From Mytilus edulis (taxonomy: Eukaryota): a stretch of 64,000 nucleotides of DNA. The stretch spans positions 73,470,001-73,534,000 of the forward strand of contig NC_092352.1 in the NCBI RefSeq assembly GCF_963676685.1. Reading direction: 5' to 3'. A program made the translations under genes and the position numbers. Each line of letters begins with the position of its first letter. The stretch's first letter is position 1. The notes under the pieces are model-generated. The model did not search any database and was not told where the DNA came from. It worked only from the letters and a program-made list of their open reading frames with translations. This document shows, in pieces, positions 3,604 to 62,764 of this stretch.

Positions 3604-5985
3604 CTATCCAATATTCAGGAGTTAAATCCCCAAATCCTTGTTTGTAATCCTGCCAGTTCCTGTTAAAATCTGTTGTGCCATCCACTCTTTTTTGTATCAC
3701 CTGTAAAGACATTAATAGACATAAACTATTTTCCCTCCTCAATATTTTACTATCCTATACTTCAGTATTGGCAAAAATACAGATATTTTTTTTATTTTCT
3801 TAACCAGATCTCTTGAATGATGCTTGAGGTTAAACTGACATTGATACATGCTATATCAAATCAACTATGACTTTATAAATACTATACTACTAATATTATA
3901 ATTCCTTTAGATCAAAACAGATAGTTTATCAATTTTTGAACCAAAATGGACGGAAAATATTTTATTACAGTCTCTCTAATCTGCAAGATTACATATAGAT
4001 ATTAATTTGCATATTGTTGGCATTATGCTGAGAAAACAACGGTAAGGACTTTTGAAAAACCATAATATAAATTTGGGAAACGGACCATGTTTAGATATCA
4101 GAAATTGAATGAGAAAGCAAATCTAGTTTGCAAACAAAAACCGCGGAAATCGCAAGTCCAAATGCAACCAATAAAACTGTTCTAAACGAGATATAATTTT
4201 GTGATCTTTATGCAAACTTATTTTTTTATTGTAGAAAGGTGGTTTCTATATCAATATCCTTATTAGCCGTTTTGATGAAATATTCGGATTGTGTACACCC
4301 TTCTTGCTGGTTTGATTTAACAGGCTTAAAGTGGCATTACTTTACCTTCTAATGGGGAAAATTTTCATCACAATGATAAAAATAATAAAGATAATACAAC
4401 TGGTTATTATAATTATAATAAAAATAAAAATAACATGAATATTAAAAATTTCACTTACGATTCAAATATACTTTTCACCAGATGTCATACTATTTTGATT
4501 TCGATTATTTCATAAATAAGGATGAATATGACATACCGTCCATTGACTATCGACTCTCATTTCACAATACACTTCAACTGGCTTGTTATCAACGTTTATT
4601 TCGTAAACACCACTAAGACTGCCTCCAGGGATGTCGCTGCAATCAATGATCATGGCTGCCGTTTCCTCTTCTGTCGCACTTTCAATGGTTATTGCAGTAG
4701 ATCTTTCGTTGCTTGTTGTTGATATTTCGGTAGTTGATTTTTTTCCCAGTGTTGTACTATGACTTGATGTAACTGTTGCGATGTTGCTTGTTTCTACATA
4801 TGTGAAATTGAAACATGTCTAACATCCATGGCATACTATTATAATATCTAGTATTGATGTACTTGTTAATATATTATACTTTTTACATAAATACATTTGT
4901 ATGTCAAAAGAATAAAAATTCCTTTTTTTTGTTTATTCTAGAACTCTCTAACTCTATCAGTTCTAAAACAACATGAACATGTGAATACACTATATAAGTT
5001 TAGAACATAAACGAAAAAGTACATAAAAATTACTGAACAACGCAAACCCCTCCAAAGAGTTGTTCTGAGGTGCCGCAGTACGGTTAGACGATTCTGCTCC
5101 ATATCCAACACCCCATAGTTAACATTTATTGTAAAATCGTATATATCTTAATCATATTTCTATGTTCCATGTTCTATGTTCTTATTCCATGTTCAGAAGA
5201 ATTATGCGGATATATTATGCATAATTAAGTATTTTTCAATTAAACTAAAAATGATACTTTATACTTTTGATATGTTGGCATCGTTTCATTTGGTTAGCGT
5301 TATTATGAGTTATTAAAAAACAATTGAATTATTGCATGCTTGATAAGCTATACATTAAAGTATGCGTTTAGATGGCATAAGTTGAAAGCAAAATTTACTA
5401 ATAATCGCTTTTTCCTGTTGCAGGTAAAAGTGTAATGTTAAACACTTTAAAAAAAAGTAAAACGAAAGATACTTAGGGATATTGAAAGCATTGAGTCGAA
5501 ATAAGTCCTAAATCAACAAAAACAGAACTGACGATACCCTCAGAGACAAAAAGCTCTAGCGGTTCTTGAAAACATTTTGCTTTTATTAAATGGAGCCACA
5601 AAGATAAGCCTAGTGAATTTTGAAGATATAGTCACTTAAAGTGATATAGAAACAAAATATCAACTATGTATGAAAAAAATTAAAATAATTAATATGCTCA
5701 CTTATTGTGTTTTCTTAGAAAAACACCACTGTCAGAATGTTCAGTTACAGGAAAACAGTCACGATGAAGGTGACATGTGTTTGTTGTTATGTTGTAACAT
5801 GCTGTACAGCAATCATTTCTGGTACACTCTCTGGCACATGCAATGGAGGAAGGTACTGTTACAGTTAAGAGATATGTTGCGTTCGATGTGATTCGTGTTT
5901 TATTTTTGATCGAAAACAATTGCAATTCACCTTTGGAAAAGCAGAACAATGATAGAACCACTACCACAATTCTAAGCATATACAT
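3604..5985 (-). pseudogene. PAN/apple-mucin stalk-fibrinogen (FReD) gene, copy E; exons 1-3 only, probably non-functional
   Basis: Exon 1 5706..5985 (MYMLRIVVVVLSLFCFSKG...CARECTRNDCCTAC), exon 2 4537..4799 (short Thr stalk + IDCSDI...VYCEMR...QWT), exon 3 3604..3700 ([33 protein letters not shown]). The intron-1 donor is AT instead of GT (5704-5705) and the acceptor is AT instead of AG (4800-4801). Exons 4-5 are not seen before the DIRS element. Confidence 0.75.
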
Positions 5986-6059
5986 GACTATATATTGTTT
6001 GAGTCTTGAGTAACAAGTCTTCAAAAACCGCAATGCGGTGTATGACAATCAAAATATTA

Positions 6060-6066
6060 TTTTATA
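6060..6066 (-). promoter_or_regulatory. Candidate TATA box of copy E
   Basis: TATAAAA on the minus strand ~75 nt upstream of the ATG, in a block conserved with copy C (35678-35684) and altered in copy D. Confidence 0.35.
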
Positions 6067-60455: not shown

Positions 60456-60555
60456 NNNNNNNNNNNNNNNNNNNNNNNNNNNNNNNNNNNNNNNNNNNNN
60501 NNNNNNNNNNNNNNNNNNNNNNNNNNNNNNNNNNNNNNNNNNNNNNNNNNNNNNN
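60456..60555. other. Assembly gap (100 N)
   Basis: Run of N; 100 is usually a placeholder for unknown size. Confidence 0.99.
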
Positions 60556-62132
60556 AACACGAATCCCACCACAAAAATGGGGAGATCTCAAGAATTCAGG
60601 AATGATTATCAGATCGTTTTGTACTGGTGGTACCCGTAAATAACATCATGTACAATGAAATGTTTTGGTAAATTGTCGAATTCGGTGATCTCACAATCGA
60701 GAAAAATATGATTGTAGTGTCATAGCGGTCAACCAACCCATGAATGCATCTTTCATCAATGAAAACAATCTGTATACGATCGTCCTTTACATCAGTAACC
60801 CTCTATTGAGGAAAACAGGATAGGAAACGCATATTATAAGTTTGACATGTAACTGGGAGATATAGACTCCACATGCAGTTGTTGCTAGAATTTTACTACA
60901 AAGAAATGACAGTTTGTAGTGACTTCTTTTGTTGGAAGGTATTATTTTACAGTTTTTAGATGTTAGTAAAGAAATTAAATGAAGCATATTTTACTGTATC
61001 TGTGGTATCCTTTATTTCATGTCAATTGGAAAGAGGCATTTAACATAGTCATCAAACATAGAATGTTGTACTGAAAAGACATCATCTGTATAGCGGAATT
61101 TGAAGTTAAAAGAAGACGCTAGATTTTTTTTAAATTCTACCGGAAAGCATTTGTATGCAGTTGGTCTCATAATAAAACAAATTTCAAATGTAAGAAGATC
61201 TCATTACCTCCCATAGGAACAACTATTATGTGATGAAAAGCACGTCTATGTTGTCAATCAGAAATGTAAGCATTCAGAGAATTTTTTCTTTGAATCAGAT
61301 TGTTGTTTTACCAACGTATGATGTGTCCCTTCCAAAAATATAGTTATACATGTTATATCTCGATTTAGGTTGACAATAAAGTTAATAAAATACATATAGA
61401 CTATCTGATTTTCGTCTAGAATGGGAAATACTAGTGTATAGTGTATATTGTAGACAAACAATCTTATGTACTGAAGCAGATCATTGCAGTTTTGTTATCC
61501 TCTGGGTAATTAGTTTCACTGTCCCTATAAAGCTCAACTGATAAATTAAGGCAACAGTAATGTGAAATTGAGATTTTAAGTGAATTGTCACTATTTCCTT
61601 ATAAAAAATGTGTAATGTGGTTAACAAACAAAATCGTGGATGGTCGAACTTTATTTGGGGACAATAACATATTTTATCGGAATCTATTAGCTTTAAAACG
61701 TAATATTGCTTATTTGAAGATTAAAGCTCTCAAGATCCTTCGTTTGACAAAATTCCGACACCAGGCGTGACCGACTGTATATCATATATGATAGATAACT
61801 AGCCAAACTGCAAATAGGACGTTTAGATTTGAAGAAAACATTTATTTGAATGTGACAAAAATACGAACAAATGATCAAATGAATGATAAAAGTACGTACT
61901 GATGACTTCTTCCGTCTGTAAGGGGTAGTTTAGAATATTGAAAAGAAAAGCATATATATTCGGTTAACTTTTAATGGATATGCATTTGATCATTGTATCA
62001 TTGTATTTTGTTAATGCCGGAAATGGAATTAAATTAAGATAGTCGATATAATGTGTTCTGCAAAACAAAATAAAGCAAATACAAAATAGTAATATGTGTT
62101 CCCGTTCTTTTGTTTTGTTCGTAGAGCCTTAC

Positions 62133-62764
62133 TTGCTGAGTGGTGTAGAAACGTAACATTCTACGATATTGCACGTTCTGGAAACAAAACACCTTATCGC
62201 TATTTAGTCCATTCCAGGAAAAACAGTCATTTTTACAACTTCCTGTTTTGGGTCACCGGCCGAAAAATGGAGGTCATCAGTAGTGAGCTGAGGGAGAAAA
62301 AACTTTAGAAAGTGATCATCAAGAAACTTTTTTCGAAATTAAAATGAAAGTAAAAAAATATTTTGTTTGAAGTATTTACGGTAGTTTAAACAGGTCTCAT
62401 TAAAAAGTATCATGCATGGTGCATTGAACAGGGTCCCAGATAACTTCAACTGGATGAAAAAGTTGTGTAATTTTAGAACTTATCCGGAATGGAATAAATA
62501 GCGATTAGGTGTATTAGAATCTAACATGCACTCGCTTGTTTGTATATCATAGCTCATCGAACAACAAGAAGAATGATCAACGCATAAACCAGCACATACT
62601 ATTCTAGATCTAACTTTTCTTACTTCCAAAGAAGTTAACTTTGATGTAATCTTCATATTGTGGATTACTATAAATGTTTGATTGGTTATCTGCATATTGC
62701 AACATTGTATAACAATCGCAATACCTGCATATATAACCAAAGCGATAAACATAATGCTTTGCAT
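62133..62764 (-). pseudogene. Copy A exon 1 (signal peptide + PAN/apple), interrupted by a MITE and a stop
   Basis: MQSIMFIALVIYAGIAIVIQCC...CAGLCVDHSSCCSMSYDIQTSECMLDSN breaks at 62513 and resumes at ~62187 as FPERAIS*NVTFLHHSA|GTAAG, aligning with copy [18 protein letters not shown]|GTAAG. Confidence 0.82.
62189..62512. mobile_element. ~325-bp MITE inside copy A exon 1
   Basis: Inverted repeat acaccttatcgctatttagtccattcc / ggaatggaataaatagcgattaggtgt (25 of 27 match). Confidence 0.8.

What the first reader, a model, noticed from the sequence alone, without database searches (positions are those of the whole stretch)
3604..62764. Tandem family of secreted two-headed PAN/apple - mucin stalk - fibrinogen-domain proteins
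Seen: five same-strand paralogs with conserved exon phases, encoding signal peptide, a Cys-rich PAN/apple-like module (C-x3-C...CC...C...C), a Thr-rich stalk and a FReD; no transmembrane segment. Known: FReDs are invertebrate pattern-recognition lectins; ficolins pair them with collagen and gastropod FREPs with IgSF domains; PAN/apple modules bind proteins or glycans. Inference: these are dumbbell-shaped bridging lectins with two recognition heads on an O-glycosylated spacer, diversifying by duplication, head swapping and spacer length change. I do not know of a characterised family with this architecture, but cannot search to confirm novelty.
Basis: partly seen in the sequence, partly recalled or inferred. 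Interest (0 to 1): 0.8.

Follow-up and report, generated by a model that had tools for sequence, protein, structure and literature searches.

The report
Mussel PAN–stalk–fibrinogen lectin gene cluster
This stretch of a blue-mussel chromosome holds a tandem cluster of secreted lectin genes, two intact and three decayed, that join a small PAN/apple head to a fibrinogen-type sugar-binding domain through a threonine-rich stalk; it is a stalked local version of a head-plus-fibrinogen pairing already noted in other molluscs.

Summary
All genes lie on the minus strand. Five paralogous first exons (signal peptide plus Cys-rich head) exist. Only copies C (26633-35599) and D (45285-51965) are intact five-exon genes, with phases 1-0-1-1, all GT..AG and summed lengths divisible by 3. 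Copy A has both intron-1 splice sites mutated. Copy B has stops and frameshifts. Copy E has a truncated head exon, no donor and no exons 2-3 in the assembled sequence; the N gap lies in that interval, inside repeat-like DNA, and no family exon abuts it.

The head is a PAN/apple module by three tests: profile against solved structures E 2e-10, an AlphaFold model with pLDDT 88 whose listed Foldseek hits are all PAN/apple entries, and ESM Atlas. The stalk is 40-44% Thr+Ser and built of tandem repeats. The fibrinogen-related domain (FReD) is complete. One contig of a public run joins exon 1 to exon 2 exactly at the predicted sites.

Full-length counterparts sit in Mytilus annotations under generic fibrinogen-like names. 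The head exon has at least 94 matches in this genome, linked to FReD, C-type lectin, WSC or Sushi bodies. PAN/apple with FReD is already in print for oyster, limpet and snail. Verdict: new member of a known kind. The bridging-lectin mechanism is untested.

The parts
35317..35599 (-). Copy C exon 1: start codon, signal peptide and PAN/apple head; ends in phase 1
   Evidence: ORF and donor G|GTAAGT. PAN_1 20.0 bits. AlphaFold pLDDT 88.3. Foldseek hits are PAN/apple entries. The X1 contig ends its exon-1 piece at 35317.
32221..32735 (-). Copy C exon 2: 134-aa Thr-rich stalk (T 31%, S 9%, P 4%), then the FReD start with its first Cys pair
   Evidence: Acceptor AG|AT and donor ACG|GT. Composition. 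1.9 copies of a 156-nt repeat at 32439-32727. Fibrinogen_C positions 4-49. The X1 contig covers 32219-32735.
29477..29573 (-). Copy C exon 3 (FReD)
   Evidence: Fibrinogen_C 47.2 bits. Splice sites.
28582..28746 (-). Copy C exon 4 (FReD)
   Evidence: Fibrinogen_C 67.6 bits. Splice sites.
26633..26904 (-). Copy C exon 5 (FReD P domain with DSDND calcium-site motif, stop codon); both Cys of the usual P-domain disulfide are replaced
   Evidence: Fibrinogen_C 64.0 bits. Alignments to FGL1, angiopoietin-2 and tachylectin 5A.
51659..51965 (-). Copy D exon 1: signal peptide and second-type PAN head (27% identical to C's)
   Evidence: PAN_1 16.1 bits. 95% identical to P0045 residues 1-78.
49530..50422 (-). 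Copy D exon 2: 260-aa stalk (T 36%, S 8%, P 1%) with 7.2 copies of an 84-nt (28-aa) repeat at 49705-50312, then the FReD start
48183..48279 (-). Copy D exon 3 (FReD)
47425..47589 (-). Copy D exon 4 (FReD)
45285..45550 (-). Copy D exon 5 (FReD, stop codon)
3604..5985 (-). Copy A, probably a pseudogene: head exon 5706-5985, exon 2 4537-4799, exon 3 3604-3700; both intron-1 splice sites mutated; exons 4-5 not in the window
   Evidence: An exon-5-like match with an in-frame TAG lies 6.5 kb before the window start.
13029..18115 (-). Copy B, pseudogene: head exon with an in-frame stop, broken exon 2 (15406-15721), exon 3 with a 1-base deletion (about 14610-14710), partial exon 4 (13029-13121), no exon 5
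62483..62764 (-). Copy E head exon, truncated at its 3' end (last conserved Cys and the donor lost)
   Evidence: PAN_1 23.1 bits.
55297..57749 (-). Copy E FReD exons 4 (57585-57749) and 5 (55297-55568), open and with canonical splice sites; exons 2-3 are absent from the assembled sequence
60456..60555 (.). Assembly gap (100 N) between E's exon 1 and exon 4, in repeat-like DNA; continuity unknown
31174..31178 (.). Recombination breakpoint in intron 2 of copy C: below it C is D-like, above it A/B-like
   Evidence: blastn of the window against itself. dS by exon.

Best explanation
This is a birth-and-death tandem cluster of genes for secreted fibrinogen-related lectins of a mussel.

Each intact gene (C and D) has five exons. 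Exon 1 gives a signal peptide and one PAN/apple module. Exon 2 gives a Thr-rich tandem-repeat spacer of variable length and the start of the FReD. Exons 3-5 give the rest of the FReD.

Shown: the gene structure; the PAN fold; the complete FReD; the exon 1 to exon 2 splice in one contig of a public run; the decay of copies A, B and E; the chimeric origin of C; and the membership of the head exon in a family with at least 94 matches in this genome.

Inferred: the proteins are soluble humoral or mucosal pattern-recognition lectins. The FReD would bind glycans with calcium. Its pocket is probably altered, because the P-domain disulfide and the neighbouring His are replaced. The stalk would be a heavily glycosylated, extended spacer. 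The PAN head would either bind a second ligand or pair two chains through its seventh, unpaired Cys, which would give the multivalency that FReD lectins need.
For: Gene models:
- Canonical splice sites and phases 1-0-1-1 in C and D.
- Exon sums of 1332 and 1728 nt.
- Database proteins P0036 (449 aa, M. galloprovincialis, C-like) and P0045 (525 aa, D-like) carry the same junctions: QWTV|IQKR, YWLG|NENL, DAG|DSLI.

Transcript:
- Run X1 record 5 has 632 letters. Letters 1-105 lie on 35317-35421 and letters 106-622 on 32219-32735, with 13 other letters in all.
- No second near-identical head copy that could be a retrocopy exists in this assembly; the next best match is 80% identical.

PAN head:
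- Pfam PAN_1 gives 16.1-23.1 bits; 2 of 5 heads are over the 21.4 cut-off.
- The profile of 37 heads against PDB sequences gives 6ryv E 2.2e-10, MIC4 1.5e-5 and SML-2 3.8e-5, and also matches HGF and factor XI.
- The AlphaFold model has pLDDT 88.3.
- All Foldseek rows listed (ranks 1-50) are PAN/apple entries: TMq 0.55-0.63, best E 1.2e-3.
- ESM Atlas: 28 of 30 feature hits are PAN_1 clusters; structure TM 0.73-0.81.

FReD:
- Exons 3-5 give 47-68 bits.
- 8 of 8 full-length counterparts give 146-250 bits.
- dN/dS is 0.00-0.19 in exons 3-4 and 0.34-0.54 in exon 5.

Stalk.

Family context:
- 94 head matches at E<=0.01, from 150 scored of 174 candidates.
- Of 20 fetched non-window loci, 11 have FReD exons within 10 kb downstream, 1 has a C-type lectin and 8 have none of my reference domains.
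- Nine further loci pair a head with a FReD last exon, by coordinates only.

Cysteines: counting in the sequences, the C and D heads each have 7 Cys and the FReD has 2, an odd total.
Against: - Three raw RNA-seq runs of organism B (X8, X11, X17) gave depth 0 on exons 1-3 of copy C; only intronic repeats were covered.
- Run X1 is only guessed to be RNA, and it gives one contig at depth 7.3.
- Copy D's transcription was not tested.
- 3 of 5 copies are decayed, so the locus may be dispensable.
- No binding, glycosylation or oligomer data exist.
- The stalk is Pro-poor (1-4%), unlike classical PTS mucin domains.
- The canonical acetyl-group pocket may be lost: Cys to Val/Ser and His to Thr in the alignments. 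Which residues form that pocket is recalled, not tested.
- The full-length AlphaFold model of P0036 was poor (pLDDT 41.9), so the two-globule shape is not shown.
- Signal peptides were judged by hydrophobicity only.
Confidence: 0.7

Rival explanations
1. The PAN head is not a second recognition head. It is a shared handle for oligomerisation or docking. The same leader-plus-head exon has been shuffled onto different lectin bodies, and it pairs chains or ties them to a common host partner such as a hemocyte receptor or mucus. Only the FReD reads the target.
For: The same head type precedes Fibrinogen_C (P0003, P0011, P0021, P0026), WSC (P0014), Lectin_C (P0019) and Sushi (P0017). A C-type lectin lies downstream of the head at L039. 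An ESM Atlas mollusc cluster combines Lectin_C (94% of members) with PAN_1 (26%). The Cys count is odd (sequences). From recall: the apple 4 domain of factor XI mediates dimerisation.
Against: The heads are very diverse, 25-47% identical across loci. Within the A/B/C group dN/dS is 0.64-1.73, which fits ligand-driven change or decay better than a conserved docking surface. The nearest solved relatives include the sugar-binding apple domain of SML-2, whose entry is a complex with a galactose analogue.
Confidence: 0.35
2. One reading: a true two-headed bridging lectin. The PAN head and the FReD each bind a different ligand, and the stalk spaces them so that the protein cross-links target to target or target to host cell.
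For: There are two independently folded binding-type modules on a long spacer that was modelled without secondary structure at pLDDT 21-29, in an otherwise weak model. Both heads and stalks vary between paralogs.
Against: There are no binding data. 10 of the 11 other PAN-FReD loci examined have no Thr-rich stalk: the open frame before the FReD Cys is 11-34 aa with T+S at most 0.25. The spacer is therefore not essential to the head-FReD partnership.
Confidence: 0.3
3. The proteins are structural or mucus components (gill or mantle mucus, extracellular matrix) rather than immune receptors. The glycosylated stalk would be the working part, and the end domains would cross-link the gel.
For: The stalks are long and repeat-built, 134 and 260 aa with 40-44% Thr+Ser and 4 and 14 N-x-S/T sites. 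Both end domains are binding modules.
Against: The stalk is absent from most related loci. It is short compared with gel-forming mucins (recalled). There are no Cys-rich multimerising domains of mucin type in the Pfam output.
Confidence: 0.15
4. The locus is mostly a graveyard. C and D are recent survivors of a decaying, presence/absence-variable cluster and contribute little at present.
For: 3 of 5 copies are decayed. Further exon-5-like matches with stops lie beside the window. Retroelement insertions lie between the copies. Coverage was zero in three RNA runs. DNA runs hold only 0.53-0.61 of the sampled words.
Against: C and D keep every splice site and frame. FReD exons 3-4 show dN/dS 0.00-0.19. 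Counterparts are kept in at least four Mytilus species. One spliced contig exists.
Confidence: 0.1

Closest known systems
Mollusc FReD proteins with a PAN/apple domain: Biomphalaria glabrata FREP1 (gene Bg179), four Crassostrea gigas FREP genes, some Lottia gigantea FReDs
   Same: An N-terminal PAN/apple module sits on a protein that ends in a fibrinogen-related domain. They belong to expanded, clustered lectin gene families (passages read in PMC5440852, and PMC7588048).
   Different: The snail protein has an IgSF domain and an interceding region between PAN and FBG. Here there is no IgSF or coiled coil in Pfam but a Thr-rich tandem-repeat stalk. I could not see the oyster and limpet architectures: Huang et al. 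2015 is not held and supplements are closed.
Stalkless PAN-FReD genes of the same genome and genus (for example P0026 and P0011; loci L033, L036, L041-L046, L050)
   Same: Same head type, same phase-1 leader exon, same FReD exon layout.
   Different: They go from the head almost straight into the FReD. The window's cluster and the P0040/P0042/P0043 group have grown repeat-built stalks.
Ficolins and tachylectin 5A
   Same: Secreted proteins with a C-terminal FReD and a DxDxD calcium-site motif. Exon 5 aligns to tachylectin 5A at E 7.7e-11 and to ficolin-2 at 2.4e-6.
   Different: There is no collagen-like region. The P-domain disulfide and the following His are replaced in C and D.
Apicomplexan apple-domain lectins (Sarcocystis SML-2, Toxoplasma MIC4)
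   Same: PAN/apple fold. SML-2 is 28% identical over 68 aligned columns. Profile E-values are 3.8e-5 and 1.5e-5. The SML-2 entry is a complex with a galactose analogue (entry title).
   Different: These are parasite adhesins with tandem apple domains and no FReD. Sugar binding by the mussel head is only a possibility.

Membership tests
Fibrinogen-related domain (Pfam Fibrinogen_C, PF00147) | Match to the family profile over its curated cut-off, across the whole domain | tested here: met
   Copy C exons 3, 4 and 5 give 47.2, 67.6 and 64.0 bits against a cut-off of 22, covering profile positions 45-220; exon 2 covers positions 4-49 at 14.9 bits. 8 of 8 full-length counterparts give 146-250 bits.
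Fibrinogen-related domain (Pfam Fibrinogen_C, PF00147) | Two conserved disulfides: one in the A domain and one in the P domain beside the ligand pocket (layout recalled) | tested here: not met
   The A-domain pair is present (IDC...VYC in exon 2). The P-domain pair is replaced in C and D (NVA...NWS against NCA...RC in FGL1 and tachylectin 5A). E keeps one of the two Cys. The loss is shared by P0036, P0038, P0039 and P0045, so it is a derived trait of this subgroup, not damage.
Fibrinogen-related domain (Pfam Fibrinogen_C, PF00147) | Calcium-site acidic motif (DxDxD) in the P domain | tested here: met
   DSDND in C and D and DRDND in E align with DRDHD of FGL1 and DKDHD of tachylectin 5A. Calcium binding itself was not tested.
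PAN/apple module (Pfam PAN_1, PF00024) | Profile match over the curated cut-off | tested here: inconclusive
   2 of 5 window heads are over 21.4 bits (E 23.1, B 22.8); C 20.0, A 18.9, D 16.1. 2 of 8 full-length counterparts are over it. The family's own profile of 37 heads reaches solved PAN modules at E 2.2e-10.
PAN/apple module (Pfam PAN_1, PF00024) | PAN fold: a helix packed on a curved antiparallel sheet, with a conserved Cys core | tested here: met
   The model has pLDDT 88.3 and one helix (48-54) among five strands. Foldseek rows 1-50 are all PAN/apple entries, rmsd about 2.4 over 68-79 columns. Atlas TM by query is 0.73-0.81. Four Cys are invariant in 37 heads.
Gastropod FREP in the strict sense (IgSF + interceding region + FBG) | One or two N-terminal IgSF domains | tested here: not met
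   No Ig-type family in Pfam for any window exon piece at E<=1 or for 8 full-length counterparts at E<=0.1.
Ficolin | Collagen-like Gly-X-Y region before the FReD | tested here: not met
   No collagen family in Pfam. The stalk sequences printed have no Gly-X-Y run.
Mucin-like (PTS) domain | Pro/Thr/Ser-rich tandem repeats carrying dense O-glycans | tested here: inconclusive
   T+S is 40% in C and 44% in D, with tandem repeats. Pro is only 4% and 1%. O-glycosylation is not testable with these tools.

The most novel reading that the evidence does not exclude
The signal-peptide-plus-PAN exon is a genome-wide phase-1 leader cassette, with at least 94 matches in this genome, that has been shuffled onto fibrinogen-type, C-type lectin, WSC and Sushi bodies. 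It would act as a common dimerising or docking handle. Mussels would then run a combinatorial repertoire of secreted lectins that share one way of being assembled or presented, and the stalked C9 cluster would be its long-reach version.
Probability: 0.25. Interest if true: 0.65.

Novelty: new member of a known kind. Interest (0 to 1): 0.35.

Why it matters
Mussels resist many diseases that kill other farmed bivalves, and their expanded lectin families are thought to be part of the reason.

This locus gives a clean, dated example of how such a family diversifies: tandem duplication, a recombination that swaps the head-plus-stalk half between paralogs, repeat growth in the spacer, and rapid decay of copies.

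It also shows that a PAN/apple head sits on many mussel lectins. Public annotation misses it because the Pfam score falls just under the cut-off.

The head, the stalk and a FReD with an altered pocket are each easy to express and test. The practical value is a defined set of constructs for asking what a second module adds to a FReD lectin.

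Tried and rejected
1. RNA evidence from raw reads. Three RNA-seq runs of organism B (X8, X11, X17) laid on 29500-35499 gave depth 0 on exons 1-3 of copy C and hundreds of reads on intronic repeats. This is no support, and it shows neither silence nor absence of the gene in those animals.

2. Full-length fold. The AlphaFold model of P0036 with a 15-row alignment had mean pLDDT 41.9. 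I used it only for the observation that residues 109-235, the stalk, have pLDDT 21-29 and no secondary structure. I ran no fold search on it.

3. Partner survey of all head loci. Only the first 20 of the 90 non-window loci could be fetched.

4. Link to the scan's earlier 'defensin-fold head on MAM' note (s1-838850). By eye, 0 of my 94 head matches lies upstream on the same strand within 20 kb of any of the 150 scored MAM matches. Sameness of the two cassettes is not shown.

5. IgSF, collagen and coiled-coil readings of the linker are rejected, because Pfam gives none. The UPA_2 hit on D's stalk (21.2 bits, 0 stretches) is taken as low-complexity noise.

6. The 452-aa ORF at 795-2153, the piece beside the gap and two other ORFs gave no Pfam family.

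7. Literature. Searches found no paper describing a Mytilus PAN-stalk-FReD family. Huang et al. 2015 on oyster FREPs is not held. Supplements are closed, and those of PMC5440852 and PMC7588048 may hold the PAN-FREP models.

Each exon was searched on its own, and natural database proteins (P0036, P0045, P0039) stood in for the full-length products.

Full report
WHERE AND WHAT.
The window is G000:C9:73470001-73534000 of a 1.37-Gb assembly. Two of its contig lengths equal those on record for NCBI Mytilus edulis proteins. C6 is 93,901,275 bases, as for XP_071177426.1 (P0011). C9 is 88,296,451 bases, as for P0039. The host is therefore a blue mussel. G+C is 28-36% throughout. All parts of the finding lie on the minus strand.

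THE GAP FIRST.
The 100 N at 60456-60555 lie between copy E's head exon (62483-62764) and its exon 4 (57585-57749). No family exon abuts them. The ORF listed across the gap (60240-60572) is only N read as X. The piece to its left has no Pfam family. Its one bearing on the finding is that E's missing exons 2-3 could be hidden there if the gap is really longer.

ANATOMY.
Self-comparison of all open pieces of 35 aa or more, and tblastn of each exon against the window, give five units.

Copies C and D are complete.
- C: exons 35599-35317, 32735-32221, 29573-29477, 28746-28582 and 26904-26633.
- D: exons 51965-51659, 50422-49530, 48279-48183, 47589-47425 and 45550-45285.
- Every intron is GT..AG, and the phases are 1, 0, 1, 1.
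- The exon sums are 1332 nt (C) and 1728 nt (D), both divisible by 3. That gives 443 and 575 aa.

Copy A keeps open exons 1-3. Its intron-1 donor reads AT and its acceptor AT. It has no exons 4-5 in the window. The nearest exon-5-like match, 6.5 kb before the window, carries a TAG. A database fragment (P0002, from an ENA contig) has the same head with the donor codon intact, so this decay is recent or polymorphic.

Copy B has a stop in the signal peptide, stops in exon 2, a 1-base deletion in exon 3, a partial exon 4 and no exon 5.

Copy E's head exon loses similarity after the fifth conserved Cys and has no donor. Exons 2 and 3 were not found between 57750 and 62482, even with the E-like protein P0039 as query. 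Exons 4 and 5 are open and well spliced.

So two of the five copies are intact.

THE THREE MODULES.
Head.
- Pfam PAN_1 scores 16.1-23.1 bits, and 2 of 5 heads are over the 21.4 cut-off.
- An alignment of 37 heads (window, 22 genome loci, 11 database proteins) has four invariant Cys.
- As a profile it reaches solved PAN modules: a Colletotrichum copper oxidase (E 2.2e-10), Toxoplasma MIC4 (1.5e-5), Sarcocystis SML-2 (3.8e-5), HGF, factor XI and Eimeria MIC5. In all 27 sequences match at E<=1.
- AlphaFold with that alignment gives pLDDT 88.3.
- Foldseek against the PDB finds nothing at E<=0.001, but its best rows (from E 1.2e-3, prob 1.00, TMq 0.55-0.63) are all PAN/apple entries through rank 50.
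- ESM Atlas on residues 36-112 of P0036 gives PAN_1 clusters in 28 of 30 feature hits and structure TM 0.73-0.81.

Stalk.
- C has 134 aa with 31% Thr and 9% Ser. D has 260 aa with 36% Thr and 8% Ser. Neither has Cys. Pro is only 4% and 1%, and there are 4 and 14 N-x-S/T sites.
- D has 7.2 copies of an 84-nt unit at 96% identity. C has 1.9 copies of a 156-nt unit at 89%.

FReD.
- Exons 3-5 of C score 47-68 bits and together cover Fibrinogen_C positions 45-220. Exon 2 adds positions 4-49.
- Exon 5 aligns to FGL1, angiopoietin-2, tachylectin 5A and FIBCD1 at E 3e-11 to 2e-10.
- The acidic calcium-site motif is kept. Both Cys of the P-domain disulfide and the following His are replaced in C and D, as in P0036, P0038, P0039 and P0045.
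- This is a derived trait of the subgroup. From recalled ficolin and tachylectin structures, it suggests a changed pocket.

IS EXON 1 SPLICED TO THE REST?
I laid four runs on 29500-35499. In X1 (Logan contigs; 'RNA?' is a guess; organism A) one 632-letter contig at depth 7.3 has letters 1-105 on 35317-35421 and letters 106-622 on 32219-32735. That is exon 1 joined to exon 2 exactly at the predicted G|GTAAGT and CAG| sites. It has 13 other letters in 622. Its last 10 letters lie on nothing in exon 2. X1 also has depth 7.7 over exon 3's bin.

A DNA retrocopy could mimic this. The assembly has no second near-identical head, however; the next best match is 80% identical.

Against this, the three raw RNA-seq runs of organism B gave depth 0 on all three exons.

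Independent gene predictions in other assemblies carry the same junctions: P0036 for C and P0045 for D.

HOW THE CLUSTER EVOLVED.
blastn of the window against itself shows two things.
- C is collinear with D from 25372 to 31178 (D 43819-49521, 73-85% identity). This spans the 3' flank, exons 5-3 and intron 2.
- C is collinear with B and A from 31174 up to 36767. This spans the rest of intron 2, exon 2, intron 1, exon 1 and the 5' flank.

C is therefore a recombinant, with a breakpoint near 31175. This agrees with the scan's note s1-839861.

Synonymous distances fit.
- C-D dS is 0.20-0.27 in exons 3-5, but 0.96 in the exon-2 tail and 1.58 in exon 1.
- A-C dS is 0.22 in exon 1 and 0.15 in the exon-2 tail, but 0.73 in exon 3.

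Selection differs along the gene. dN/dS is 0.00-0.19 in exons 3-4, 0.34-0.54 in exon 5 and 0.64-1.73 among the A/B/C heads. Two of those three heads are in pseudogenes, and the counts are small.

Retroelement pieces lie between the copies, with weak RVT_1 hits at 38828-40231 and 40885-41415.

The cluster goes on beyond the window on both sides. Exon-5-like matches lie at C9:73463237 (minus, one stop), 73605877 (plus), 73615802 (plus, one stop) and 73638494 (plus, one stop). Further heads lie at 73597427 and 73620962 (plus).

THE WIDER FAMILY.
Database proteins.
- C's head exon, searched against 1.84 billion representative proteins, found 31 at E<=0.001.
- Of the 20 that I looked up, the named close ones are from M. 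edulis, M. galloprovincialis, M. coruscus and M. trossulus. The named far ones are multi-PAN proteins of a jellyfish and a fungus.
- Pfam on 10 of them gave four with Fibrinogen_C, one with WSC, one with Lectin_C, one with Sushi, and three with PAN only.
- A word search with P0003 returned 29 proteins at E<=1e-5. Most are Mytilus FReD proteins named fibrinogen-like, angiopoietin-like, tenascin or hypothetical. None of the 29 has a PAN family among its precomputed Pfam domains.
- The 8 that I fetched all have a complete FReD and a sub- or near-threshold PAN_1. This is why annotation hides the architecture.

Genome loci.
- In this genome the head has 94 matches at E<=0.01, from 150 scored of 174 candidates. 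Four of them are in the window.
- Of the 20 closest non-window loci that I could fetch, 11 have FReD exons within 10 kb downstream, 1 has a C-type lectin and 8 have none of my reference domains.
- Nine more heads pair with a FReD last exon by coordinates alone.
- In 10 of the 11 FReD-linked loci, exon 2 goes almost straight into the FReD: the open frame before the first Cys is 11-34 aa with T+S at most 0.25. The stalk is therefore special to this cluster and to the P0040/P0042/P0043 group.
- The genome's FReD family is huge, with 1602 first-look candidates.

WHAT IS KNOWN.
- PMC7588048 (passages read) confirms this PAN/Apple FREP (Bg179). [quoted passage not shown] It notes that the snail gene did not respond to schistosomes.
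- PMC13712769 (passage read) notes PAN/Apple followed by a C-lectin in the snail.
- I could not see Huang et al. 2015 or any supplement.
- Five searches found no description of a Mytilus PAN-stalk-FReD family and no functional work on the pairing.

MECHANISM.
Shown: a secretory-type N-terminus, two folded binding-type modules and a Thr-rich spacer.

Inferred: a soluble lectin whose FReD binds glycans with calcium through a modified pocket. The head would either bind a second ligand, for which sugar-binding apple domains such as SML-2 are a precedent, or pair chains. The odd Cys count (7 in the head, 2 in the FReD; sequences) points to one free Cys. The head's use on four kinds of lectin body favours a shared handle.

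VERDICT.
This is a real locus, with the architecture read correctly from raw sequence. Two of the five copies are alive, and the head-FReD pairing is already noted in print for other molluscs. It is a new member of a known kind, with a stalked twist. Interest 0.35.

Noticed in passing
genome-wide; window 35317-35599 as the query: The signal-peptide-plus-PAN first exon has at least 94 matches across 13 of the 14 large contigs (C1, C2 and C4-C14). In database proteins it precedes WSC (P0014), C-type lectin (P0019) and Sushi (P0017) bodies as well as FReDs. This looks like a shuffled phase-1 leader cassette.
   Followed up: partly
window 26633-26904 and 45285-45550: The P-domain disulfide of the FReD and the His after it are replaced in C and D, and in four counterparts from other Mytilus assemblies. 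Copy E keeps one of the two Cys.
   Followed up: partly
window 30700-31100, 31500-31900, 32100-32300, 32700-33100, 33300-33500, 34900-35100: Intronic repeats of copy C are covered at tens to hundreds of reads in all three raw RNA-seq runs, on both mate orientations, while the exons have none. Most reads run on into unlike sequence (share 0.84-0.86). They therefore come from other copies of transcribed repeats.
   Followed up: no
window 32107-32120 joined to 33711-33720: Reads in all three raw RNA runs join these two places on opposite strands, with 4-21 start places per run and joint. This suggests an inverted repeat element or a foldback transcript from copies elsewhere (table 5).
   Followed up: no
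window 38333-41897: Two inverted copies of a retroelement piece, 92-100% identical at the protein level, carry weak RVT_1 matches of 25.6 and 19.7 bits, both under the 29.6 cut-off. They lie between copies C and D. The scan's note s1-839893 calls this a Penelope-like element.
   Followed up: partly
window 795-2153 (minus): A 452-aa open frame, Ser/Asn/Asp-rich, with no Pfam family at E<=0.01. It sits where copy A's exons 4-5 would be expected, so it may be an inserted element.
   Followed up: partly
window 5704-5706; P0002: An ENA contig protein (P0002, 95 aa) has copy A's head with Gly where the window reads Asn. The base change behind it is the one that destroys the donor here. Copy A's splice defect is therefore absent in another sample.
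   Followed up: no
G000:C9:73463237-73638772: The cluster extends beyond both window ends. Exon-5-like matches lie on the minus strand before the window and on the plus strand after it, and three of those four carry stops. Two more heads lie on the plus strand. The far side is inverted relative to the window.
   Followed up: partly
G000:C7:23776530-23787815: One 3519-aa open frame holds about twenty tandem MAM domains, inside a MAM-rich region of some 130 kb. I saw it while checking the MAM lead.
   Followed up: no
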